From positions 310,001 to 374,000 of the IMG/VR virus record IMGVR_UViG_3300027899_000001: a DNA stretch of 64,000 bases. The stretch is one strand, 5' to 3'. Below, piece by piece: positions 8,054-50,921 of the stretch. The notes below the pieces were generated by a model. That model did no database searches. It saw nothing but the letters and a program-made list of their open reading frames with translations, and was not told the DNA's origin. The translations under genes were made by a program, and so were the position numbers. Each line of letters starts with the position of its first letter. Positions within the stretch are counted from its first letter, which is position 1.

Positions 8054-10585
8054 TTACCTTAAAAATGTAACATCGCCAACTTTTTCGAAGTAATCACCAT
8101 TTATGTATCTTCCTGAGGCTCTCCATACATAAACTCCTTGAGGCGCAAGATTTCCATCTTCAAAATATCCATCCCAGCCTTTCATTAAATCTCTACTTTC
8201 ATAGATAAGAACTCCCCATCTATTAAATATTTGAAGATAATATTCTATGACATTTTCAAAATGAGGTCTAAAAACATAATCCATTTCTGAATATACTCCT
8301 TCTTGCCATTGTCCACCAGTTGGTCCTGAACCATTCCATTTAAAAGCATTTGGAAATTTTATAGTTCCTCCTGACCATTTAACAGTTATGGGTAAATTAC
8401 TTAATACATTATCACTGCATCCGTAATCATTTTTTGCATATAATGTAACCCAGTAAGAACCTTCATTCTCATATTTATGCCAAGGATTTATATCATAACT
8501 TAATTCGGTTCCATCTCCAAAATCCCATGCATAATAATCTGCGTACTGAGAATAATTATAAAATGTAACTATTTGAGTATTACTATAAATATCTTTAGGA
8601 TAATAATCAAATGATGCAATAGGACTTTGAAATACAGTAACCATTCCTTGGTGAAAAGAAGATCCTGCAATATTATATACAGTTAATCTTACAATATAAG
8701 AACCTGGAAGATTATAAGTATGTACAGGATTAAATTCATTAGAATAAGATCTATCTCCAAAATCCCATAAATATGATTCTCCATATACACTTAAATTTCT
8801 AAATGTAACTACCATTGGATTACATCCTACAGTATCTGGAGCAAAATAAGCTAAAGGAACAGGAGGCAATACAACTTGAATATGAATAGTATCAAATGTC
8901 GTGCATCCCCATTGATCAGGAGGAATAGTATATGTAACTACATGTTCTCCTATATCTGCAATTTTTGGATCAAAGGTGGAGCCCACAACTCCTATTCCAC
9001 TCCAAATTCCGCCTTCAGGTGTTGCATGTAATACTACAGATGGTCTATTAAGAAAAATAGTTCCGACTTGTTGTATTTCTATATTAGGAATAGGCATTAC
9101 AGTTACAATAGTGCTATCTACATCTTGGCAATCTGTATTTACAATATTATAGACTATTAAATGATCTCCAGGACCTGTAATTTCTGGATGAAATACATTT
9201 CCAATCATTCCTAATCCTGTCCAAATTCCACCTAAATCATGTGTATTTACTGTAATAGGCGTACTATTCACACATAAAGTATCTACAGGAGTTATCGTTG
9301 CATTCGGAGTTGCTACAGTTATAGTTGTTGTATCACTATTACTACATCCACTTACATTTATACTATAAATAATTCTATGATTTCCCGATCCCGCCAAAAT
9401 AGGATCAAATACATTTCCTACAACTCCTGCTCCTATCCATGTGCCTCCTGGATCATGTGCTACTAAAGTAACAGGCGCATCAGAAGAACATACTATACTT
9501 GGTGCAGATATCGTTGGATCAGGAATTGGCGATACTCTTATATATGTTGTATCACTATCACTGCATCCTTCTCCACTTGTTATTGTATGTATAATTCTAT
9601 GATTTCCTGGGCCTGCAACTGTAGGATTAAAAATATTTCCCGAAACTCCGGGTCCTGACCATTCTCCATTTGGAGACACACTTGTTAAAGTTACAGGATT
9701 TGCATTTGAACACATCGAATCAACAGGATTGATTGCTGCATCGGGATAAGGAACTATTAATATAATAGCAGTTGTAACCACTGGAGGAAAATCTCCATTT
9801 ACTTTATCTCTTGGTTGTCCGGGAATACTTGGGTCATCATAAGGATTACAATAATTCCAGTTTCGTAATGTTACTTGAAAATATTGTCCAACTAATTTAT
9901 CATTAGCTACATTCATTACATCTGAATAAACACCCGATCCTGTAACAGGACCAGGAAGAGTAATTATGCGAGCTGTATCTGGATACATTGTAGAATGTCC
10001 ATCTATTGTAACAGGAATTCCTGTCATAGTTATATCAGTTCCATAAATCCATTGTATCCATCTTGTATTAATATTTGGATTATCTCTTTCTTGAGGTGGA
10101 ACACAATTAAATAAAGTTAAATCTTGAAATCTAACATCTGCTCCATTTCCAAAGCATATTGGATAAACAGTAGGATCAATATGCATACGTCCACCATTAT
10201 GATTATCATCATCCCATACAGTTACTATTTGTTCTTGTGCTGAAGAAGTGCAAAGAACACCATTAACTCTAAGCATCGCTTGAGGATGATAATTACAAAC
10301 ATCTCCAGCTGACGTATAGGTATTAGTTGCCGTTGCTTGAAAAATACCAGGACCTACCATAACTGCTGGAACATCTACAACAGTACCATTATTCCAATCA
10401 AATTGAATACTTACAGGCGTACCAGCATCATTAACTCCAGTATAACTTACATTCCAAACTGCTATAACAGGAGAACATAATTTATCTGGAGTAATATTAT
10501 TAGCTTTAGAAAATATTGTACAAGTTTGCCCAAAAATATTAAGCGAAAGAAATGATAAAATTAAATATAGAAACCATTTTTTCAT
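8054..10585 (-). CDS. PKD-domain protein with T9SS type-B (gliding-motility) C-terminal sorting domain
   Basis: Signal peptide, SGxGV repeats, YLWDFGD PKD motifs, C-terminal IFNRWGVLIYES...GWDG...GVYVW. Confidence 0.85.
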   Translation of the reverse strand: MKKWFLYLILSFLSLNIFGQTCTIFSKANNITPDKLCSPVIAVWNVSYTGVNDAGTPVSIQFDWNNGTVVDVPAVMVGPGIFQATATNTYTSAGDVCNYHPQAMLRVNGVLCTSSAQEQIVTVWDDDNHNGGRMHIDPTVYPICFGNGADVRFQDLTLFNCVPPQERDNPNINTRWIQWIYGTDITMTGIPVTIDGHSTMYPDTARIITLPGPVTGSGVYSDVMNVANDKLVGQYFQVTLRNWNYCNPYDDPSIPGQPRDKVNGDFPPVVTTAIILIVPYPDAAINPVDSMCSNANPVTLTSVSPNGEWSGPGVSGNIFNPTVAGPGNHRIIHTITSGEGCSDSDTTYIRVSPIPDPTISAPSIVCSSDAPVTLVAHDPGGTWIGAGVVGNVFDPILAGSGNHRIIYSINVSGCSNSDTTTITVATPNATITPVDTLCVNSTPITVNTHDLGGIWTGLGMIGNVFHPEITGPGDHLIVYNIVNTDCQDVDSTIVTVMPIPNIEIQQVGTIFLNRPSVVLHATPEGGIWSGIGVVGSTFDPKIADIGEHVVTYTIPPDQWGCTTFDTIHIQVVLPPVPLAYFAPDTVGCNPMVVTFRNLSVYGESYLWDFGDRSYSNEFNPVHTYNLPGSYIVRLTVYNIAGSSFHQGMVTVFQSPIASFDYYPKDIYSNTQIVTFYNYSQYADYYAWDFGDGTELSYDINPWHKYENEGSYWVTLYAKNDYGCSDNVLSNLPITVKWSGGTIKFPNAFKWNGSGPTGGQWQEGVYSEMDYVFRPHFENVIEYYLQIFNRWGVLIYESRDLMKGWDGYFEDGNLAPQGVYVWRASGRYINGDYFEKVGDVTFLR

Positions 10586-12777: not shown

Positions 12778-12894
12778 TGGAGCGTGTTCCTGGATTTGAA
12801 CCAAGACTTCCGCAATTACGAGTGCGGTGTTCTACAAAGGATTTTCTCGTGAGAAATGGTACCAATTTCCTTTCCTTCCTTAAACTACACACGC
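12778..12894 (-). tRNA. tRNA-Thr(CGT)-like gene with ~40-nt D-loop insertion and 8-nt anticodon loop
   Basis: Encoded CCA, T-arm CTTGG-TTCAAAT-CCAGG, stem CCGCA/TGCGG, D-stem GTTT/GAAC enclosing AAAGGA...TCCTTT hairpin. Confidence 0.55.
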
Positions 12895-12901
12895 ATTAAA
12901 A

Positions 12902-18487: not shown

Positions 18488-19471
18488 TTAAAATTCAGGA
18501 CATGGAAGAGCTCTCATTCGTTGTTTTCCATTTCTTTCAAAAAATCTATTAAATTCATAGATAAATGAAATTTCATGAGCTCCAACTGTTGCTCTATTGA
18601 GACTAGAAATTGTAAAATCGTAACTATAGCCAACAAATATATTTTTTGTTTTTAATCCTGCTAAACCTATAACTGCATCTCCTGGTTGATTTGATAATCC
18701 TGGAATGCCTCTATACCAAAGTCCTAAAATAAGTGGAGGTCTTGCATAATAAACTCCTACATCTGCTTGATAAAACTTTCCTTGGGTTTGTAAATTAACT
18801 GCTAAAGAAACAACATCTTGTCGTTCTATTTTAAGTCTTTGTTTCTTTATTATTTGTATTCCTCCATATAAGTTTACCTTTACTGGAACTCTTGATTCAT
18901 CTCCATAAAAAGAAATTTTAGGAGTTAACATATGATCTACTGTTACTCCACTCCATATTCTATCATTATACGCTATTATCGATGAAGCAAAGTCTATACT
19001 TGCTGAATTATCAAAAGTTGGTGGAATAACTGGAGGAGTATTGTTTATATTACTATTAAATATAAGTTTGTTAATATCTAATCCTAAATATTGAAATTTG
19101 AAATTAACACCAGGCCTTACATGCCATGTATTATTAATTTTAATATCATAAGAATATAAAGCTCCTATTGTTGTATTACTTAAATCTCCTGATCCTGCTA
19201 CATCGTATGATGCAATTATTCCTATTCCTGAATTATATTGAGGTAACGCTTTATCAAATGAAACACTATAAGTGTTATAGATATTTGATATTCCAGGCCA
19301 CTGATTTCTATAATTCATTGTTAATCTATAATCTTCTGTAGCACCTGCAAAAGATGGCGCTAACCATAACTTGTTGGCATAAAATTGTGAATACGTTGGA
19401 TCTTGTGCAAAAGTATTTGAATAGATTACAAATAACAGAATAAATGAACATATGTATTTTACAATACGCAT
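18488..19471 (-). CDS. PorP/SprF family T9SS outer-membrane protein
   Basis: QDPTYSQFY...APSFAG...YRNQWPG...YSYDFTIS...HEISFIY. Confidence 0.9.
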   Translation of the reverse strand: MRIVKYICSFILLFVIYSNTFAQDPTYSQFYANKLWLAPSFAGATEDYRLTMNYRNQWPGISNIYNTYSVSFDKALPQYNSGIGIIASYDVAGSGDLSNTTIGALYSYDIKINNTWHVRPGVNFKFQYLGLDINKLIFNSNINNTPPVIPPTFDNSASIDFASSIIAYNDRIWSGVTVDHMLTPKISFYGDESRVPVKVNLYGGIQIIKKQRLKIERQDVVSLAVNLQTQGKFYQADVGVYYARPPLILGLWYRGIPGLSNQPGDAVIGLAGLKTKNIFVGYSYDFTISSLNRATVGAHEISFIYEFNRFFERNGKQRMRALPCPEF

Positions 19472-23470: not shown

Positions 23471-23550
23471 ATAGATAAGTAGGCAAACCGAATGTTCCCA
23501 ATGTAGGGAGGCTATATATGCCCTTTAAGCTCGAAACGGAACTTATCTAT
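23471..23550 (-). ncRNA. Unidentified 80-nt multibranch RNA
   Basis: 10-bp terminal stem ATAGATAAGT/ACTTATCTAT enclosing GGC/GCC and TCCC/GGGA hairpins. Confidence 0.35.
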
Positions 23551-23553
23551 TTG

Positions 23554-23632
23554 TGGGCAGAATGGGATTCGAACCCACATTTTCAACCAAATTACCTTGG
23601 TCGTGTGTATCAGACACGCTGGATATCTGTCC
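23554..23632 (-). tRNA. D-armless tRNA-like RNA, anticodon GAT (Ile)
   Basis: Acceptor GGACAGA/TCTGCCC; CGTGT-CTGATAC-ACACG; extra arm GACCAA-GGTAAT-TTGGTT; T-arm. Confidence 0.65.
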
Positions 23633-23641
23633 TAAAATTTG

Positions 23642-25111: not shown

Positions 25112-25804
25112 TTAATTATTATTTTTAAAATATATTTGTTCATATTTTTTTATATCATTTAGAAATATAATTTCTACATTATTATAATGAGATAAAATAT
25201 ACTTCATTTTAATTTTATCTTTATTACTATACCAACCTTTTACTTCAAAAAATTTTTGTAAATTTGGACACCAGAAATCAGGAAAATATAAATGTTCTTT
25301 TTTATTATCATCAATCCAAATTAAATTTAAATTATCTTTATATGAAACAGGTTTTACCCAATCTTTATCTAGATAATTTAAAATTTCTGCAAATCGTTTT
25401 TCATATGTTCCTTGAACTTTAACTATAGTTCCATCTAATTTTTTAGTTTCGTACCATTTACATCTTCTACTGCCTCCACTAGCATGCTTACCCCCACCCC
25501 CTTTATTATTTTTAGAAATTTGTTCCTTTGCTATTTGTGTATGCTTATATAAACTTTTTCTACCTTTTATGGGTGAAATTTTACCTTTATTTGGATGCCA
25601 ATTTTTTCCTTTTTCTGTATGACAAGCCCATATATGAAATTTTACATTTTTAAATTCTTTATTACAATATGGACATTGTTTTATAAATTTTTCTTTTTTT
25701 ACTTTTACTTTTATTATTCCACATTTATCATAATGTTTTTTAAAATTTGATATACTAATTTCTTTGTTACATTTATCACAAACTTTTTTAGTTCTTGATT
25801 TCAT
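25112..25804 (-). CDS. Free-standing PD-(D/E)xK endonuclease (paralog of 50256..50921)
   Basis: VQGTYEKRFA...YFPDFWCPNLQKFFEVKG. Confidence 0.75.
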   Translation of the reverse strand: MKSRTKKVCDKCNKEISISNFKKHYDKCGIIKVKVKKEKFIKQCPYCNKEFKNVKFHIWACHTEKGKNWHPNKGKISPIKGRKSLYKHTQIAKEQISKNNKGGGGKHASGGSRRCKWYETKKLDGTIVKVQGTYEKRFAEILNYLDKDWVKPVSYKDNLNLIWIDDNKKEHLYFPDFWCPNLQKFFEVKGWYSNKDKIKMKYILSHYNNVEIIFLNDIKKYEQIYFKNNN

Positions 25805-25892
25805 ATGAATTATTTTTTATTTATTATATTCATATTAACTCTTTTAGTTTTGCTACTTTTAAAAGTAACTCCATTCCATTACTACTACTTAG

Positions 25893-25964
25893 TGCGGATA
25901 GAGGTAATCGAAACCTCATCTTAAGTTTGGAAGACTTGTACACTAGCCATTGTGCTATACCCGC
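25893..25964 (-). tRNA. trnG-TCC: tRNA-Gly(TCC), second copy
   Basis: CAAGT-CTTCCAA-ACTTA. Confidence 0.85.
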
Positions 25965-25969
25965 ATGAT

Positions 25970-26082
25970 ACTGAGAAAATTTAGAAGAATAAATTGCCGC
26001 GCCATTGCGGCTATTTCCCCTTATTATTATTTGGCGGGGAAATTCAGAATCGAACCGATGTAATTCTTACAGTTACTACAGT
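25970..26082 (-). ncRNA. YrlA-type Y RNA (Ro-binding stem plus permuted tRNA-like domain)
   Basis: ACTG-T-AG/CT-CAGT ends; T-arm TCGG-TTCGATT-CTGA; loop-closed acceptor TTTCCCC-GCCA..GGGGAAA; D-like arm GCCGC..GCGGC. Confidence 0.8.
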
Positions 26083-26087
26083 ATTTG

Positions 26088-26160
26088 TGACCCCACCCAG
26101 AGTCGAACTGGGACAACTTGCTTAAAAGGCAAGGATTCTATCCATTGAAATTATGAGGTC
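26088..26160 (-). tRNA. trnK-TTT: tRNA-Lys(TTT), second copy
   Basis: CTTGC-CTTTTAA-GCAAG. Confidence 0.85.
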
Positions 26161-26201
26161 AATTGCCAACATGTCAAAGATCGTTGTTCTAAGTAGAACG
26201 T

Positions 26202-26235
26202 AAAAAAGCGGGAACTTTTGAGGAACCCGCTTTTT
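26202..26235 (-). terminator. Intrinsic terminator (attenuator of tRNA array 2)
   Basis: AAAAAGCGGG...CCCGCTTTTTT. Confidence 0.8.
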
Positions 26236-26253
26236 AGATTATTATGATTGTCT

Positions 26254-26361
26254 TTATTTACCAATCAAATATATCATATATACTGCGGGCGTAAGTTTTC
26301 CTCTAATGCCATTATCATTAGCATTCCAGTTGTTCACCATATGTTTCGCCATGCGTATCAT
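26254..26361 (-). promoter_or_regulatory. Leader peptide MIRMAKHMVNNWNANDNGIRGKLTPAVYMIYLIGK (attenuator 2)
   Basis: 35-codon ORF upstream of terminator; composition mirrors array 2. Confidence 0.75.
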
Positions 26362-29316: not shown

Positions 29317-29325
29317 CAATATCGT

Positions 29326-29583
29326 CTGAGAAAAATTAGGAAGCGTGTTTTTATAAGTTGTCTCTTATGCTCTAACCTACTTATCAATCTGTCCTGTACG
29401 TGATTAAAAGACGCCTAAGACACCGCACCTTCGGGAATTACGGCCCTTTCGGGAAAATTGATGTTCAGAATCAAGAGCGCTGTCATAGTTTGAATTTATC
29501 TAGGTTGCCGAAATCCATCAGCTGGGTTTTAACTATGTTGCCATAGAAAAAAGGTTTCGAAGTACCGCTTGACCTTACTACAG
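29326..29583 (-). ncRNA. Long Y-like RNA (258 nt) with unknown multibranch insert
   Basis: CTGTAGTAAGG..TACTTCGAAACC 5' motif, TTCTCAG 3' motif, several GNRA-capped hairpins. Confidence 0.65.
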
Positions 29584-29600
29584 ATGTTGTTTAAAATATA

Positions 29601-30736: not shown

Positions 30737-31951
30737 TTATTTTATATTAAGTTGATATTTACAAAATTCTATCATTTTTTCATCTCCTGTATGTTTTCCT
30801 TCTGAATCAGACAATTTAATACAAGGTACCCATTCATCGTCAGGATCAGGTTTTGCTGCAATTAGTTTAATAACCATATTAAGTGGGTTAACTCCAACAT
30901 CATTAGATAAATTTGTGCCTATTCCCATTGCGCATTTAATTTCTTTATTACATGATTTTGTTAATTCAATTGCAAGATCAGGATTAAGATTATCTGAAAA
31001 AATTATAGTTTTATCATTGGGGTCAATTCCCATACTTTGATAATGTTTAATAACTTTTTCTGCAAAATGAAATGGATTTCCACTATCATGTCTTACACCA
31101 TCAAAAAGCTTTGAGAATTTTTTTCCAAATGATTTAAAGAATGATTCTGTTGTAAATGTATCTGTAAGAGCAATTCCAAGATCACCTTGATAAACATTTG
31201 ACCAGTTTTCAAGAGCTAAAAAATTTGCTTGTTTAAATCCATATTTTGCAGCATGAAACATAAACCATTCATGTGCATGAGTTCCTATTGGAGTAAGATT
31301 AAACATATGAGCAAAGTGTACATTAGAAGTTCCATTAAAATTATCTCTCATACTAAATGCTAAATCTTCTACAACTTCTTTTTGATTTTCATATGAATAT
31401 CTTCTACGAGTTCCAAATTCAGAAATCTTAACTCCATGATTATTAAATAATGCAGCTTTTTTTAGATTATTTTGTTCTCTTTCTACTCTTGAATTTATTT
31501 TTTCTCCCGTCATTTTAAAATACAATTCAGATATAAGAGCAAGAAGTGGAACTTCCCAAAGAATTGTACGATACCAGTAGCCTTCTACAGTTACTTGAAG
31601 TTCACTTCCATTTTGTATAACTCCAACTTCTGAAGGATTATATCTATATCCTGCCAAAAAATCAAAATACGCAGGATCGATATATTTACATTTAGTTTCA
31701 AAGAAGTGTTTTTCTGCAGTCAAAAGTTTAAGAGAAGACATATGAGAAATTTGTAATCTTAGTTCTTCTGCAAATCCTTCTGGAAAATTTACTTTTGAAC
31801 GAACTATTAATGCATATTTAACTTTTGCTCTTGGAAAAAGTTTTAACACTGCATTCATCATACTAAATTTATAAAGATCGTTATCGAGTATTGATGTAAT
31901 TATAGGTTCCATTTTATATTTTTTTAGCATGAAAATAAGTGACTCCATCAA
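30737..31951 (-). CDS. pncB: Nicotinate phosphoribosyltransferase
   Basis: SILDNDLYKFSM, EFGTRRR, GTHAHEW, LTDT, GVRHDSG, KLSDSEGK. Confidence 0.95.
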   Translation of the reverse strand: MMESLIFMLKKYKMEPIITSILDNDLYKFSMMNAVLKLFPRAKVKYALIVRSKVNFPEGFAEELRLQISHMSSLKLLTAEKHFFETKCKYIDPAYFDFLAGYRYNPSEVGVIQNGSELQVTVEGYWYRTILWEVPLLALISELYFKMTGEKINSRVEREQNNLKKAALFNNHGVKISEFGTRRRYSYENQKEVVEDLAFSMRDNFNGTSNVHFAHMFNLTPIGTHAHEWFMFHAAKYGFKQANFLALENWSNVYQGDLGIALTDTFTTESFFKSFGKKFSKLFDGVRHDSGNPFHFAEKVIKHYQSMGIDPNDKTIIFSDNLNPDLAIELTKSCNKEIKCAMGIGTNLSNDVGVNPLNMVIKLIAAKPDPDDEWVPCIKLSDSEGKHTGDEKMIEFCKYQLNIK

Positions 31952-32381
31952 TTTCTGTCATATCAAGAATTTTAAATTGATATGCACTAAATAATGCTGT
32001 TACAATTCTTGGTGTTAACGATCTATCAATTTTATTATCTAATAAATTAAATATAACATCTATAAGCTTTCCATATAATATATGAGTTTTTAAACTCAAC
32101 ATAGGTTTACTTGCTATAAATTTTCCATATACATAAGTATTCTTTTTTAAAAGATTATTAAAATCTTTAATAGTATCGTCTAAATATTTAATTTCATTTA
32201 ATTTTTTAAGATGAACAAGCGTTTTAATTCCTTTTAGTTCATCTTTATCATAGAAATAAAAATGTTTTCCCGAAAGAAATAAAACTTTTTCATCTTTAAC
32301 TTTTTTATGTTTTTGCACATATGCATGCATAACATGATCATATGTTTCATCTTTATATTGAATATCATTAAAACTTTTCAT
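31914..32381 (-). CDS. Hypothetical protein
   Basis: ORF track. Confidence 0.55.
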   Translation of the reverse strand: MKSFNDIQYKDETYDHVMHAYVQKHKKVKDEKVLFLSGKHFYFYDKDELKGIKTLVHLKKLNEIKYLDDTIKDFNNLLKKNTYVYGKFIASKPMLSLKTHILYGKLIDVIFNLLDNKIDRSLTPRIVTALFSAYQFKILDMTEIDGVTYFHAKKI

Positions 32382-32383
32382 TA

Positions 32384-32749
32384 TTATCTTATTCTAAATG
32401 TATCAAAAAATGTTCTAAACGATAGTCTTTTTTTCAAAATTATTGTTTCAGATACGTATTGAGTATCATTTTCATAATATTTTGTTCCTTTAGGAATTAT
32501 GAATTTAAATACAGTTAAGTAAGAATGAGCATCATCTGCCGCAATTTTAAAACTTTTATATGAATGATAGCCTATGTTAATAGAAACTTGATCATAATAA
32601 AAAGTAGCATCAAATTCTACTTTTTTATTTAAAAGATTTTTAGTATATTGAAAATCTGTAAACCAAGATATTCCTCTTCTAGTCATAGTTTTATAACAAA
32701 CTATATCTTTTTTTGCTGTTTTAAGAACATTTTTTCCAGTAAAACACAT
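32384..32749 (-). CDS. Hypothetical phage protein
   Basis: TAKKDIVCYK...GYHSY...FIIPKGTKYY. Confidence 0.6.
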   Translation of the reverse strand: MCFTGKNVLKTAKKDIVCYKTMTRRGISWFTDFQYTKNLLNKKVEFDATFYYDQVSINIGYHSYKSFKIAADDAHSYLTVFKFIIPKGTKYYENDTQYVSETIILKKRLSFRTFFDTFRIR

Positions 32750-32760
32750 ATTTTTAATTT

Positions 32761-33665
32761 TTAAAAGATTAGACTTCCTTCATCATCCCAACGACAATAT
32801 AATTTACTATTTTCTCTTAAGATAACATATTTAAGAGATTCGTTATTGCCTTTAGACATACAATCATCATCAATAACAACTGACATTCCATTTATAGAAT
32901 AAACTTTTGCACCAAACGGAAGAGTATAAAGAAATTCACCATTTCCCGCCTTTTTAGGAAACATTCTCTCAGTTCCTATATATGCATTTTCTCCTGTAAT
33001 ATATTTCTTAATAGCACTTATAGTTTCGTCTTTACATGCATTTTCTTTAACCCATTCACCTTCGTCATTTATAATAAATCCATCTTTATCTAACTCATAA
33101 TATATTTTTCTAAAAGTAACTTGATTTGCACCAAGAAATTTACATCTAGCTATAATTTCTTTTGGAGTATGATTATCATATTCTTTTAACATATTAAGAC
33201 TTAAACGAATATTAAATCCTCGTGATTTAAGTAAAGAAATTAATTCTGATAAGTTAAATTTTAATTTTTTAGAAACTCCAATTATATTTAAATTATTTTC
33301 ATCAGAAAAAATATCAGCAACAGAAAGACTTATCGTATTTACTTGAAGTTTTTGTAATAATCAATATTATCATCATCTAATAATACTCCAGTAGTTTGTA
33401 ACTCAACATTAGGAAATGGATAATTTAAATCTTTAAATAAAACAGATAAAACTTTTAAGAAATTTGTATTTTGCAAAGCTTCTCCTGTTCCTGTAAGAAT
33501 ACAAGTATTTACTCCATTCATTACAGCATACTTAATACGTTTTTCTATTTGAATATACATAAAAGTATCTTCATATGGAGAATCATGCATTCTACTTACA
33601 CAAAATGGACATTTATTTACACAACTTTTTGTAGGAACTACGATAGAAATTGTCTAAATGTTCAT
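32761..33665 (-). pseudogene. Radical SAM protein interrupted by TAG at codon 4 and a 1-nt frameshift near 33360
   Basis: MNI*TISIVVPTKSCVNKCPFCVSRMH (CxxxCxxC), LTGTGE, ELQTTG; continues in the -1 frame LQKLQVNTISLSV into ORF 32761..33192. Confidence 0.75.
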
Positions 33666-33731
33666 ATATTAATTATTATTGTGTAAATATAATACTAATT
33701 TCTGAATTAAAAAAATATTTTGCTATTTATT

Positions 33732-34382
33732 TTAAATATTTCCTATAAAAGAAAGTGTAAGAGAATCTACATAATAAACTTTAGCTTGTGTAAAAGCTTC
33801 TATAGTTTCTGACAAATCTGAATTTATTGATTTACACGCATCTTCAATAACATATGTATTAAAACCTTCCATTGCTGCATCTATTGCAGTTTCTTTCACA
33901 CAATAATCTAGAGCTAAACCACATACGTAAACTTCAACTACATTTCTTTCATTAAGAAAATCTTGAAGTTTTTTAGGAGCATCTGGATTTATTATTTTTG
34001 ATCTATCAAATGCACTATAAACATGATTATTCCTTTCCATGCCTTTTTTAAAGATATAAAAATCTTTTTTGCATTTTGATAAATTCAGATCTGGATGAAA
34101 TGAAGCACCTAATGTATCTGCTACACAATGATCAGGCCAAAGAATATCTTTTTCTCCATTTTCTCTTACGTAACTATCGTAAACAGAAGCTCCGGGATGT
34201 TGTGAGGCGAAAGCATCCATTTCTGGATCATGCCAATCTTGTGTAAATATAACTAAATCAAATCTTTCAAGGAGATCATTAACTACGGGTACAATTTTGT
34301 CTCCATCTGGTACTGCTAGTGATCCTCCAGGGCAAAAATCTCTTTGCAAATCGATCACTATTAATGCTTTTTTCTTTATCAT
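33732..34382 (-). CDS. pncA: Nicotinamidase
   Basis: VIDLQRDFCPGGSLAV, TQDWH, WPDHCV, GLALDYCVKETA. Confidence 0.95.
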   Translation of the reverse strand: MIKKKALIVIDLQRDFCPGGSLAVPDGDKIVPVVNDLLERFDLVIFTQDWHDPEMDAFASQHPGASVYDSYVRENGEKDILWPDHCVADTLGASFHPDLNLSKCKKDFYIFKKGMERNNHVYSAFDRSKIINPDAPKKLQDFLNERNVVEVYVCGLALDYCVKETAIDAAMEGFNTYVIEDACKSINSDLSETIEAFTQAKVYYVDSLTLSFIGNI

Positions 34383-34538
34383 ATCATCTTATAGTTTGAA
34401 TTTCATATTCATCATATCCATCTCTTGATTCATCTGAATCTATACATACAATTTCTAATCCAAATGATTGTAAAGCGTCTGATATATTGTCTACAATTTC
34501 ATCAGCTCTATCATCATAATCTACTCTAAATTTTGATT

Positions 34539-35474
34539 TCATAATTCTTCCTTTTTATTTTTAACATATCTATTGTATATACTATTTTCATTTTCTATTA
34601 TATCGTGTCTATATATATTGACAGGATTATTTCTTTTGAATTGAGATTTTAAATGTCGTTGAATGACAGAGTGTTGACGCATTTTATTAATTTCATCCAT
34701 ATATACTGCATTAACAGTTGGTGAATGTTTTTCAATAAAGTCTAAATATTCTTTAAGTATTCTATCAACTTCTTTATAACCATCTCTAGAATTTCCTGTC
34801 CAGTCTGGCATTATTTGTCCAAGATCTCCAAGATTTGTAACTCCAAGGCCATCAGTTGCAAGTGCAGTTATCGTATTTATTATTGTACTTCCTGCTTCAT
34901 AATTTCCAGCATATTCATTCATAGTTAACCATTCTGCCATATCATATACTTCTGTTTTCCAAAGATTTTGTATCATACCATAATCACCTACATCACCATG
35001 AAGAGTCCAAAAACCAAGAAGAAATTCTGTATAATTATCAGTAGAAAGAACTATTCCACGATGATATGAAGCTAAATCATACAAATAAATCATACGCAGT
35101 CTTGCTTTAAGATTTCCATTACGTATACGACTTGATGAACCTTCAGGATTAGGCGCATGAAACAGCATATTAGATTCCATTTTGGAATACATAAAATTAT
35201 ATTCTTCTTCAACGCTATGCTCTAAGAATTTTGTACAAAATACTTTTCCTGTTAATTTGGCTCTTTCTAATTCTTCTGGTTGATTTGAACTTACTGGCAA
35301 ACTTCTTCCTATAAGTGGAATATTTAATTCATCACAAACTGGTCTAGCAAGTGCTGCGCAAAGACAACTATCTATTCCACCTGAAATCCCTATAATAAGA
35401 GACTTTATATTATTGTTTGTAATATACAGACTTAATTCTTTTCGAATATTCGATACTGCTATTTGATAATTCAT
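34539..35474 (-). CDS. nadE: NH3-dependent NAD synthetase
   Basis: GISGGIDS, NLKARLRM, STDNYTE, FWTLHGD, KTEVY. Confidence 0.9.
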   Translation of the reverse strand: MNYQIAVSNIRKELSLYITNNNIKSLIIGISGGIDSCLCAALARPVCDELNIPLIGRSLPVSSNQPEELERAKLTGKVFCTKFLEHSVEEEYNFMYSKMESNMLFHAPNPEGSSSRIRNGNLKARLRMIYLYDLASYHRGIVLSTDNYTEFLLGFWTLHGDVGDYGMIQNLWKTEVYDMAEWLTMNEYAGNYEAGSTIINTITALATDGLGVTNLGDLGQIMPDWTGNSRDGYKEVDRILKEYLDFIEKHSPTVNAVYMDEINKMRQHSVIQRHLKSQFKRNNPVNIYRHDIIENENSIYNRYVKNKKEEL

Positions 35475-35743: not shown

Positions 35744-36247
35744 TTATAAATCATTTTCTTTGTGTTTACACCAAGTTAGATATTCATCTTGATCTCTTAT
35801 CCATTGTAATAATTCTGGATCAGTAACTTGTTCATGTTCTATTTTAGACCATAATTCGTTATCTCTTTCATTTTTATCATATTGATTAACGAAATATATT
35901 TTCTTAATTCCCGCTGCTATTATATTTTTCAAACATTCACTGCAAGGTTCAAGTATACAATAAAGTTCTGCTTCTTCAATAGCAATTCCATGTTTGGCTG
36001 CAAAATTAATAGCATTCATTTCAGCATGAACCTCATATTTTTTAGACCAATTATGATGGGCTTCTCTATCAGTTAGAAAATTATAATTAGGAAAATGATC
36101 ACAACAATTTTCAAATCCTTTAGGTGTCCCATTTATTCCCGTGGAAATAATTCTTCTATCATGAACAATAAGAGCTCCCACTTGTCTTGAGACACATTTA
36201 GATTCTTGTCCAAGTAAATATGCTGTTTTAAGAAAGAAATGTTTCAT
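35744..36247 (-). CDS. dCMP deaminase
   Basis: SKCVSRQVGA, HAEMNAI, PCSEC. Confidence 0.9.
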   Translation of the reverse strand: MKHFFLKTAYLLGQESKCVSRQVGALIVHDRRIISTGINGTPKGFENCCDHFPNYNFLTDREAHHNWSKKYEVHAEMNAINFAAKHGIAIEEAELYCILEPCSECLKNIIAAGIKKIYFVNQYDKNERDNELWSKIEHEQVTDPELLQWIRDQDEYLTWCKHKENDL

Positions 36248-46630: not shown

Positions 46631-46648
46631 ATTTAATAACTTAAAAAA

Positions 46649-46768
46649 ATCGTTACAAGGAATCAAACCCTGTTATTTCTTCGCTGAGTCCATACTATAG
46701 CTAGGATTATTCATTTACTTCATAGATTTCACTACCTCTTGGTTTTTAAGCGAATCGAGGATAACGAT
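46649..46768 (-). ncRNA. tmRNA-TLD-like 120-nt RNA
   Basis: ATCGTTA/TAACGAT stem, TTCGCT/AGCGAA helix, T-arm CAGGG-TTTGATT-CCTTG. Confidence 0.35.
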
Positions 46769-49880: not shown

Positions 49881-49945
49881 ATTTATGGCTGGTGATTTGA
49901 ATCCCATTTAATCGTTCTACCTTAACGAACCATATTTTTTATTTG

Positions 49946-50026
49946 CTGCCCTGAGTGGATTCGAACCACTATCCCAAGTTTCAAAGACTCAGATAATTAA
50001 CTTTCGCACCTTTATACGACAGGGCA
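49946..50026 (-). tRNA. trnQ-TTG: tRNA-Gln(TTG) with small GC-GAAA-GT D-loop insertion
   Basis: Acceptor TGCCCTG/CAGGGCA, G73, loop CT-TTG-AA. Confidence 0.7.
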
Positions 50027-50030
50027 ATAA

Positions 50031-50100
50031 ACTGAGAAATTCGGTTAGAGCATTTTTTCTAATTTCCAGGTTTCGAAGTATCTCTTTACCTTACTACAGT
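50031..50100 (-). ncRNA. Short Y-like RNA
   Basis: ACTG-T-AG/CT-CAGT, GGTAAAGAG/CTCTAACC, TACTTCGAAACC. Confidence 0.7.
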
Positions 50101-50103
50101 TTG

Positions 50104-50178: not shown

Positions 50179-50184
50179 ATTTAA

Positions 50185-50262
50185 GTTGAGAAATGTGGAG
50201 TGAGTGTCTTTTTTATTAGATTTGCATGTCTTTTACGAAGTAACTCATTTCCTTACTACAAC
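50185..50262 (-). ncRNA. Short Y-like RNA
   Basis: GTTG-T-AG/CT-CAAC, GGAAATGAGT/ACTCACTCC, TACTTCG. Confidence 0.7.
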
Positions 50263-50921
50263 TTTATATTAAATATTTTTTCATAATTTTGAATATCTGA
50301 TAAAAATATCATTTCAATATTATTATAATTACTCAAAATATATCTCATTTTCTTTTTATCTTCTTCTTCATATCTTCCTTTAACTTCAAAGAACTTTTTT
50401 AAATTTGGACACCAAAAATCTGGATAATATGTGTGAATTTCCCCGAATTCATTTGTCCAAGATAAACCATCAGAAAAAGGCTTTATCCAATCTTTATCTA
50501 TAATATTTAAAATAACTGCGAAACGTTTTTCATAGGTTCCTTGTACTTTTATCTTTGTTCCATCAGGTTTTATAATTTCATACCATTTACATTTTCCGCC
50601 AGTTATCCATCCTTTATTATTTATAGATATTTTTCTTTTTGTTTCTAAATCTCTTGGACCATTTTTTCTTCCTTTCAATTTAGAAGGTCTTCCTTTTTTA
50701 GTATCCCAAACTCTATTTTCAGAATGAATAGCCCAAATATGAAATTTTACGCCTCTAGGATTATCATATTCTTTTTCACATATTGGACATTTATGAAAAC
50801 CATTAGGTTGTTTATAAATATTAACTTTATTTTGTCTATTACCACATTTTTCATAATGTTTCTTAAAATTTGATAAACTTATTTCTTTATTACATTTATC
50901 ACAAATTCTTTTATTTACCAT
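50256..50921 (-). CDS. Free-standing PD-(D/E)xK endonuclease; TAG stop inside Y-like RNA
   Basis: Paralog of 25112..25804. Confidence 0.75.
   Translation of the reverse strand: MVNKRICDKCNKEISLSNFKKHYEKCGNRQNKVNIYKQPNGFHKCPICEKEYDNPRGVKFHIWAIHSENRVWDTKKGRPSKLKGRKNGPRDLETKRKISINNKGWITGGKCKWYEIIKPDGTKIKVQGTYEKRFAVILNIIDKDWIKPFSDGLSWTNEFGEIHTYYPDFWCPNLKKFFEVKGRYEEEDKKKMRYILSNYNNIEMIFLSDIQNYEKIFNIKL

What the first reader, a model, noticed from the sequence alone, without database searches (positions are those of the whole stretch)
25970..26082. Clear YrlA-type tRNA-mimic Y RNA embedded in tRNA array 2
Seen: terminal stem with a bulged U, then T-arm, loop-closed acceptor stem still showing GCCA, then D-like arm, i.e. 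a circularly permuted tRNA with the Ro stem in place of the anticodon arm. Established: this is the described architecture of bacterial YrlA RNAs that bind Rsr. It anchors the identification of the other CTGTAG...CTCAG elements as Y RNAs and places one under attenuator 2.
Basis: partly seen in the sequence, partly recalled or inferred. Interest (0 to 1): 0.6.

Follow-up and report, generated by a model that had tools for sequence, protein, structure and literature searches.

The report
Phage tRNA-mimic Y RNA, new subfamily
A 117-nt RNA gene wedged between two tRNA genes of an uncultured 405-kb phage folds as a circularly permuted tRNA closed by a conserved bulged stem, as bacterial YrlA Y RNAs do. 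It belongs to an apparently uncatalogued phage RNA family that is genetically linked to a phage Ro60 (TROVE) gene.

Summary
On the minus strand, window 26084..25968, an 8-bp terminal stem with a bulged U encloses a second stem, a T arm, a 7-bp acceptor stem with an encoded G-CCA and an 11-nt loop, and a D arm. There is no anticodon loop. Relatives in other huge-phage contigs keep the same plan with different sequences: 17 cores are 95% paired against 68% in shuffles, and 14 of 16 pairs change on both sides. All share a conserved frame (yUGUAGUAA..UUACWUCG at the 5' end, AUUUCUCAG at the 3' end). The same frame also encloses short hairpins, T-arm/acceptor minihelices and long inserts. Frame RNAs co-occur with a phage Ro60/TROVE gene, and short members lie 0.4-1.6 kb upstream of it. 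The layout is that of YrlA, but Rfam's YrlA model does not match and the GNCGAA motif is absent, so I call it a new phage variant rather than a member. The best reading is a Y RNA cut from the tRNA array by tRNA-processing enzymes and bound by the phage Ro60. Its acceptor/T module probably engages tRNA-recognising factors, possibly after RNase P opens the loop. Ro60 binding and expression are untested.

The parts
25968..26084 (-). Whole RNA element (117 nt): permuted tRNA-like Y RNA
26076..26084 (-). Stem 1, 5' strand AUACUG-U-AG, with bulged U at 26078
   Evidence: outer pairs covary across 67 frames
25968..25975 (-). Stem 1, 3' strand CU-CAGUAU
26063..26068 (-). Stem 2, 5' strand AAGAAU (in the anticodon-stem position)
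   Evidence: compensatory A-U to U-A change in L171
25985..25990 (-). Stem 2, 3' strand AUUCUU
26056..26063 (-). Family motif UUACWUCG (here UUACAUCG); its UCG doubles as part of the T stem in this copy
26043..26059 (-). T arm: stem (A)UCGG/CUGA(A), loop UUCGAUU
26036..26042 (-). Acceptor stem, 3' strand UUUCCCC
26032..26035 (-). Discriminator G followed by encoded CCA
26021..26031 (-). 11-nt A/U loop closing the acceptor stem; predicted to be removed by RNase P and 3' trimming
   Evidence: inference from M. smegmatis YrlA (PMC4201824)
26014..26020 (-). Acceptor stem, 5' strand GGGGAAA
25996..26011 (-). D arm GCCG(C)-AAUGG..-(G)CGGC; also flagged as terminator-like by the consensus scan
26087..26160 (-). 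Upstream tRNA-Lys(UUU); its 3' processing would define the element's 5' end
25892..25964 (-). Downstream tRNA-Gly(UCC); RNase P cleavage at its 5' end would define the element's 3' end
36814..38517 (-). Phage Ro60-like TROVE protein gene (567 aa), the proposed protein partner
38893..38973 (-). Short member of the same frame family, about 375 nt upstream of the TROVE start
50029..50102 (-). Short frame-family member, next to tRNA-Gln(CUG)
50183..50264 (-). Short frame-family member
29323..29586 (-). Frame-family member with a long (~200 nt) non-tRNA insert

Best explanation
The element is a phage-encoded Y RNA of YrlA-like design. It is a non-coding RNA whose 5' and 3' ends pair into a conserved bulged stem that acts as a protein handle. 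That stem replaces the anticodon arm of a circularly permuted tRNA body made of T arm, 7-bp acceptor stem and D arm. Proposed steps follow. (1) It is transcribed with the tRNA array (inferred from position). (2) Its ends are released by the enzymes that mature the flanking tRNA-Lys and tRNA-Gly (inferred). (3) It folds into stem 1, stem 2 and an L-shaped tRNA-like module (supported by covariation). (4) The conserved frame is bound by the phage Ro60/TROVE protein (inferred from family-wide linkage and analogy). (5) The acceptor/T 'top half' with its NCCA engages host factors that recognise tRNA. RNase P and 3' trimming probably open the loop to leave a nicked RNA with a free CCA end, as in M. 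smegmatis YrlA. In this way Ro60 would be tethered to a partner such as an exoribonuclease or another tRNA-binding enzyme during infection (inferred).
For: Anatomy and stability. Covariation: 17 related cores are 95.1% paired vs 68.3% in shuffles, 14 of 16 pairs change on both sides, and slid registers give 44-56%. Three close homologues have compensatory changes in stem 1, stem 2, the acceptor and the D stem. G-U pairs are frequent, so selection acts on this RNA strand. When elements are chosen by the frame alone, 30 of 32 distinct elements of 100-175 nt contain a T arm followed by a 7-bp acceptor, and none of 20 shorter ones does. The stem 1 outer pairs take A-U, U-A, G-C and C-G, and stem 2 is found in 50 of 55 frames with many sequence types. 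NCCA follows the acceptor in 16 of 23 cores, although only 4-5 of the phage's 39 tRNA genes encode CCA. Ro60 link: the TROVE protein matches Thermus phage phiLo Ro60 (9KOP/9L5Y, E=5e-14) and has a DxSxS MIDAS motif. TROVE is found on 14 of 35 fragmentary contigs that carry frame RNAs and on all 3 such contigs that are 78% complete or more, against 1 of 10 long control contigs. Short members lie 0.4-1.6 kb upstream of TROVE in at least 6 phages, and a permuted-tRNA member lies 625 nt downstream in another. The published YrlA plan has the same order of parts (PMC4201824; 10.1101/312249).
Against: Binding could not be tested. Rfam YrlA does not match and GNCGAA is absent. The element is 10.7 kb from TROVE, not adjacent to it. 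The phage has no RtcB and no CCA-adding enzyme, so it lacks the bacterial rsr-rtcB operon context. Co-occurrence with TROVE could simply reflect shared ancestry within one phage clade. The cores used for the pair counts were first chosen with a pairing filter, although repeats the selection using the frame alone.
Confidence: 0.7

Rival explanations
1. It is a structured tRNA-mimic RNA, but its conserved frame is bound by something other than Ro60, for example a processing nuclease or another phage protein. The acceptor/T module would then act alone, for instance as a decoy or substrate for enzymes or defence nucleases that recognise the tRNA top half.
For: The common denominator of the tRNA-like inserts is T arm + 7-bp acceptor + NCCA. 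The element lies inside a tRNA array. The YrlA Ro-binding motif is absent and the Rfam model fails. About 60% of the fragmentary contigs with frame RNAs show no TROVE gene.
Against: Those contigs cover only 2-28% of their genomes, and every near-complete one has TROVE. Short frame RNAs sit directly upstream of TROVE in several phages. Only 1 of 10 control contigs carries TROVE.
Confidence: 0.2
2. It is a circularly permuted tRNA gene that matures by end-joining and acceptor processing into a functional adaptor tRNA.
For: A perfect 7-bp acceptor stem, a discriminator base and encoded CCA are present. One relative (L150:3099-3248) also has an anticodon-arm-like hairpin with GCA.
Against: The target and its close homologues have no anticodon loop. 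The candidate A/U hairpin after the D arm is mutually exclusive with the covarying stem 2 and is not conserved. The same frame encloses non-tRNA inserts. ARAGORN and Rfam tRNA do not call the element. No RtcB is encoded.
Confidence: 0.03
3. It is a non-functional relic of tRNA gene rearrangement, or a spacer, within the array.
For: tRNA arrays evolve by duplication and deletion, and no donor tRNA could be found in the genome.
Against: The plan is kept with compensatory changes across many diverged phages. CCA is retained far more often than in the phage's own tRNA genes.
Confidence: 0.03
4. It is an intrinsic terminator or attenuator of the tRNA operon, with the GC-rich D hairpin followed by a U-rich tail as the terminator.
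For: The consensus scan flags 26011-25996 plus its tail as terminator-like.
Against: The tail starts with AA and is not a clean U tract. Relatives have A-rich tails after the D arm. A terminator does not explain the T loop, the 7-bp acceptor, the CCA or the frame.
Confidence: 0.02

Closest known systems
YrlA RNAs (Rfam RF02553; Chen et al. 2014, PMC4201824; crystal structure in Wang et al. 2018, bioRxiv 10.1101/312249)
   Same: The RNA has two modules. An end-to-end stem takes the place of the anticodon arm, followed by T arm, acceptor-like stem-loop and D arm in that order. The T-loop and D-loop signatures are tRNA-like. It is encoded in a genome that also encodes Ro60/Rsr. YrlA candidates have already been reported in phages.
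   Different: The Rfam model gives no match and there is no GNCGAAN0-1G motif. The conserved frame is different (yUGUAGUAA..UUACWUCG / AUUUCUCAG, with a bulged U). The element lies inside a tRNA array 10.7 kb from TROVE rather than beside it, and there is no RtcB context. Several paralogues per phage carry different inserts.
Mycobacterium smegmatis YrlA (PMC4201824)
   Same: The acceptor stem has 7 bp. In M. smegmatis this makes the RNA an RNase P substrate and yields two halves, one ending in CCA.
   Different: In M. smegmatis the CCA is completed after cleavage. Here N-CCA is encoded in the gene in most family members, including the target.
Thermus phage phiLo Ro60 with Yrl1/Yrl2 (PMC12135203; PDB 9KOP, 9L5Y)
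   Same: phiLo Ro60 is the closest solved relative of the window's TROVE protein. That phage also encodes Y-like RNAs upstream of its Ro60 gene, with a 5'-3' stem flanking a bulge that holds a CGAA-type motif. Some members of this family have UUCGAA at the equivalent place.
   Different: The phiLo paper does not use the term 'tRNA-like'. The motif in the target is AUCGG.
Circularly permuted tRNA genes (Cyanidioschyzon merolae type; from my own knowledge)
   Same: The 3' half of the tRNA is encoded upstream of the 5' half, with a short linker between the acceptor strands.
   Different: Those genes yield complete tRNAs with anticodon loops through bulge-helix-bulge processing and circularisation. 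The target has no anticodon loop or bulge-helix-bulge motif, and its end-stem is shared with non-tRNA RNAs.

Membership tests
YrlA (Y RNA-like A) | 5' and 3' ends pair into a stem; T arm, acceptor-like stem-loop and D arm follow in that order; no anticodon loop | tested here: met
   plan as described in PMC4201824 and 10.1101/312249
YrlA (Y RNA-like A) | tRNA-like conserved nucleotides in the T loop (UUCRANN with a G-C closing pair) and the D loop (GG) | tested here: met
   Read directly from the sequence: UUCGAUU closed by G-C, and AAUGG in the D loop
YrlA (Y RNA-like A) | GNCGAAN0-1G motif near the 5' end (proposed Rsr contact) | tested here: not met
   Absent from 26084-26043. The family instead keeps UUACWUCG followed by a variable base
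YrlA (Y RNA-like A) | Score at or above the Rfam RF02553 gathering threshold (69 bits) | tested here: not met
   No match at E<=10 on the 501-nt region or in the whole genome. The model also stayed below threshold in all 14 control genomes, so it is a narrow model
YrlA (Y RNA-like A) | Encoded next to an Rsr/Ro60 (TROVE) gene | tested here: inconclusive
   The target is 10.7 kb downstream on the same strand. Other members of the same frame family are 0.4-1.6 kb from TROVE, and the family co-occurs with TROVE
YrlA (Y RNA-like A) | Bound by Rsr/Ro60; modified by TruB/DusA | not testable with these tools
   Needs EMSA or RIP and modification mapping
Canonical tRNA | Contiguous cloverleaf with an anticodon arm | tested here: not met
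   Not called by ARAGORN or Rfam tRNA; no 7-nt anticodon loop
Permuted tRNA genes that give functional tRNAs | An anticodon arm is restored after the ends are joined; processing motif at the termini | tested here: not met
   The ends form a conserved 8-bp bulged stem that is shared with non-tRNA inserts
tmRNA (one- or two-piece) | tRNA-like domain plus a tag reading frame | tested here: not met
   ARAGORN reports no tmRNA in the window; a 117-nt RNA has no room for a tag ORF
Intrinsic terminator | GC hairpin followed by a conserved U tract | tested here: inconclusive
   The D arm is flagged, but its tail is not conserved as U-rich in relatives

The most novel reading that the evidence does not exclude
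The frame is a portable Ro60 handle that this phage clade has fused to tRNA parts in several permutations. It appears at the anticodon-arm position (the target), the acceptor position (L021:11515-11629) and the variable-arm position of a complete tRNA-Cys-like body (L150:3099-3248). The modules with an encoded NCCA would be opened by RNase P into nicked RNAs with a free CCA end. Some are tRNA-Leu-like with A73 and might be charged by an anticodon-independent synthetase. Ro60 would then carry tRNA decoys or sensors that act on host tRNA-directed enzymes or defences.
Probability: 0.15. Interest if true: 0.85.

Novelty: new variant of a known kind. Interest (0 to 1): 0.6.

Why it matters
What the tRNA-like module of bacterial Y RNAs does is still unknown. 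This phage clade offers dozens of diverged natural variants that share one protein handle but carry different tRNA parts, and nearly all tRNA-like ones keep the acceptor/T top half and an NCCA. That points to the top half as the working part and makes the question testable with RNase P cleavage, CCA-end status, charging, and partner pull-downs with the phage Ro60. It also shows that current models (Rfam YrlA) miss a whole phage branch of Y RNAs. Finally, it shows that tRNA arrays of huge phages can hide non-tRNA genes that use the tRNA-processing machinery for their own maturation.

Tried and rejected
- Rfam scans found only tRNAs, at gathering thresholds over the whole window and at E<=10 on 25800-26300. 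A direct RF02553 search of the 405-kb genome gave one 11-bit match on a tRNA.
- BLAST of the element against five related phage records found only 11-19-nt chance matches. Homologues had to be found by structure and frame motif.
- The genome-contig scan found frames only on small MAG contigs and none in the one complete bacterial genome that matched the pattern.
- The region around the TROVE gene of the nearest GenBank phage (LR745206.1, 34% identity) has no frame RNA and no tRNA.
- No donor tRNA for the core could be identified among the phage's 39 tRNAs.
- The MFE 'variable hairpin' UGUAA/UUACA and the A/U hairpin after the D arm were rejected in favour of stem 2.
- The short frame RNAs fold no better than shuffles on their own; their support is comparative only.
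- The large protein searches, structure prediction and complex prediction were not used because they were not needed. No alternative genetic code was applied.

Full report
**What is there.** The window is bases 310001-374000 of a 405,016-bp IMG/VR virus record with direct terminal repeats, at about 28% G+C. All 39 tRNA genes of that genome lie in the window, all on the minus strand. The finding occupies the whole gap between tRNA-Lys(UUU) (26160-26087) and tRNA-Gly(UCC) (25964-25892).

Read on the minus strand, the parts run in this order:
- A 5' strand AUACUG-U-AG (26084-26076) that pairs with CU-CAGUAU (25975-25968), leaving U26078 bulged.
- A T arm with the canonical loop UUCGAUU.
- UUUCCCC, then G, then CCA, then an 11-nt A/U loop, then GGGGAAA. 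This is a perfect 7-bp acceptor stem.
- UA, then a D arm whose loop contains AAUGG.

There is no anticodon loop. No ORF of 60 aa or more overlaps the element.

**Chance.** The RNA folds at -30.5 kcal/mol, z = -3.3, and 0 of 200 shuffles are as stable. A pattern scan for T arm + 7/7 acceptor + CCA + 4-bp D stem finds one site in the window, against 0.01 expected per shuffled window.

**Relatives and covariation.** BLAST found no homologue in related phages. A structural scan and the conserved end motifs did.

Two close homologues are L199:605-720 and L171:2610-2724. They align over the full length. The proposed five-helix structure is 96% paired, with one compensatory change each in stem 1, stem 2, the acceptor and the D stem.

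Seventeen more diverged cores were compared from contigs whose TROVE proteins are 65-80% identical to the window's. The T, acceptor and D helices are 95.1% paired, against 68.3% in column shuffles and 44-56% in slid registers. Fourteen of 16 pairs change on both sides, and there are many G-U pairs. Those cores had been picked with a pairing filter, so I repeated the selection using the frame only. Of 32 distinct frame-delimited elements of 100-175 nt, 30 contain a T-arm hairpin followed directly by a 7-nt strand that pairs with a strand 4-39 nt downstream. None of the 20 shorter elements does.

The comparison also corrects the single-sequence fold. Stem 2 (AAGAAU 26068-26063 with AUUCUU 25990-25985) replaces two small MFE hairpins at nearly the same energy.

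**The frame family.** All these RNAs share a frame:
- At the 5' end: yUGUAGUAA, a few bases, the stem 2 strand (usually AAGAG), then UUACWUCG.
- At the 3' end: the stem 2 partner (usually CUCUU), a few bases, then AUUUCUCAG.

The outer pairs of stem 1 take A-U, U-A, G-C and C-G, and the y-r pair is C-G or U-A. Stem 2 is found in 50 of 55 frames with many sequence types.

The frame encloses very different inserts:
- Full permuted tRNA bodies like the target. Some are clearly tRNA-Leu-like, with class II D arms and extra hairpins.
- T arm plus acceptor minihelices without a D arm.
- Short hairpins of 55-90 nt.
- Inserts of 200-250 nt.

The window itself holds five members: the target, three short ones (50183-50264, 50029-50102, 38893-38973) and one long one (about 29323-29586).

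**CCA.** N-CCA follows the 7-bp acceptor in 16 of 23 tRNA-like cores, which is 12 of 17 distinct acceptor sequences. Only 4-5 of the phage's 39 tRNA genes encode CCA; most have N73-C-AAA. The CCA is therefore selected, not inherited by default.

**Link to Ro60.** The ORF at 36814-38517 (minus strand, 567 aa) passes the Pfam TROVE threshold. Its best solved relative is the Ro60 of Thermus phage phiLo (9KOP/9L5Y, E=5e-14). The match covers both the HEAT-repeat and vWA parts, and a DxSxS MIDAS motif is present.

Among contigs found through the RNA motif alone, 14 of 35 carry a TROVE homologue, although most cover only 2-28% of a genome. All three contigs that are 78% complete or more (G000, G004, G028) carry one. 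Only 1 of 10 long control contigs that matched the motif by chance does.

Short members lie 0.4-1.6 kb upstream of TROVE in the window, L006, L007, L010, G006 and G009. In G014 a permuted-tRNA member with G-CCA lies 625 nt downstream of a TROVE gene that is only 39-42% identical.

The frame was not found in the one complete bacterial genome that matched the search pattern, only on small MAG contigs that are probably phage. It was also not found beside the TROVE gene of the nearest GenBank phage, which is 34% identical.

**Comparison with known systems.** The order of parts is the published YrlA plan: a circularly permuted tRNA whose anticodon arm is replaced by the Ro-binding stem (PMC4201824; 10.1101/312249). 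YrlA candidates have been reported in phages. However, two defining features fail here:
- The Rfam YrlA model gives nothing at E<=10. The model is narrow and stayed below threshold in all 14 control genomes.
- The GNCGAAN0-1G motif is absent. A different motif, UUACWUCG, occupies the equivalent junction, and some members read UUCGAA there.

The closest functional precedent is M. smegmatis YrlA. Its 7-bp acceptor stem is cut by RNase P and its 5' half acquires CCA. Here the CCA is already encoded. The phage has no RtcB and no CCA-adding enzyme. I therefore file the element as a new phage variant of the Y RNA / YrlA kind, not as a member of the Rfam family.

**Likely mechanism.**
- Shown: the conserved structure, the tRNA-like top half with NCCA, and the genetic linkage with phage Ro60.
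- Inferred, transcription and end formation: the RNA is co-transcribed with the array. Its ends come from 3' maturation of tRNA-Lys and RNase P cleavage at tRNA-Gly.
- Inferred, the protein partner: Ro60 binds the bulged frame.
- Inferred, the tRNA-like module: RNase P and 3' trimming open the acceptor loop. The acceptor/T module then recruits a tRNA-recognising host factor, so that Ro60 is tethered to it.

**Rivals.** I considered another protein partner for the frame (0.2), a functional permuted tRNA (0.03), a relic (0.03) and a terminator (0.02). They are weighed in the Rival explanations section.

**Limits.** Binding was not tested. The 'attenuator 2' claim was not evaluated. The contigs are metagenomic fragments from one phage clade, so co-occurrence is partly phylogenetic.

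**Verdict.** This is a new variant of a known kind. Interest is 0.6.

Noticed in passing
L150:3099-3248 (+), contig IMGVR_UViG_3300013131_000375: A frame-family member 625 nt downstream of a divergent TROVE gene. It carries a T arm, a 7-bp acceptor with G-CCA, a D arm and also an anticodon-arm-like hairpin (loop CUGCAAA, anticodon GCA). The frame therefore sits at the variable-arm position of a complete permuted tRNA-Cys-like body. The MFE fold does not form that hairpin.
   Followed up: partly
L021:11515-11629 (-), contig IMGVR_UViG_3300035698_018106: A frame-family member whose insert is a D arm + anticodon-like arm + T arm in normal order. Here the frame replaces the acceptor stem, the opposite permutation to the target.
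   Followed up: no
L124:9591-9761, L204:3331-3502, L206:6309-6480 (+): A frame 5' half, a T arm, an acceptor 3' strand and G-CCA are followed directly by a complete short frame RNA. No obvious acceptor 5' partner follows. This may be a nested or split arrangement; I could not explain it.
   Followed up: partly
window, all 39 tRNA genes (e.g. 26087-26160, 25892-25964): Most tRNA genes of this phage have the discriminator followed by C and then AAA rather than CCA; only 4-5 encode CCA. The conserved N73-C-AAA trailer may be a 3'-processing signal.
   Followed up: partly
window 43926-43999 (-): A tRNA with anticodon CUA (an amber-reading suppressor, labelled Pyl by ARAGORN). Similar tRNAs occur in related contigs (L027:15749-15824, L028:12183-12256). 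I did not test whether TAG is recoded, and no alternative code was used.
   Followed up: no
window 12780-12895, 23540-23640, 49945-50030, 46640-46700 (-): T-loop motifs outside the ARAGORN tRNA calls. They lie in tRNA-like sequences with insertions or odd arms, which may be intron-containing or degenerate tRNAs.
   Followed up: no
L023:18087-18386 (+), contig IMGVR_UViG_3300032053_000050: ARAGORN calls a permuted tmRNA (tag peptide GENSYKLQMAA) inside the tRNA array of a related phage. No tmRNA is called in the window.
   Followed up: no
window 29323-29586 (-); also L011:19156-19420, L021:16090-16330, L010:2239-2548, L167:3177-3445: Frame-family members with 200-250-nt structured inserts that are not tRNA-like. 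No Rfam family matches; only a weak sub-threshold hit lies next to the window copy.
   Followed up: partly
window 30737-35474 (-) and 35744-36247 (-): Between the TROVE gene and the element lie NAD-salvage genes (NAPRTase, an isochorismatase-type protein that may be a nicotinamidase, NAD synthase). A 167-aa cytidine/deoxycytidylate-type deaminase lies just downstream of TROVE.
   Followed up: no
window 8054-10585 (-), 18488-19471 (-): One protein has PKD domains and a CHU_C type IX secretion sorting domain, and another is a PorP/SprF homologue. Both point to a Bacteroidota host.
   Followed up: no
window 26200-26231 (-): A GC-rich hairpin flanked by an A tract and a U tract (bidirectional terminator shape), 40 nt upstream of tRNA-Lys. 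The + strand gives a weak sub-threshold Rfam match to cow-rumen-4 (E=0.32).
   Followed up: no
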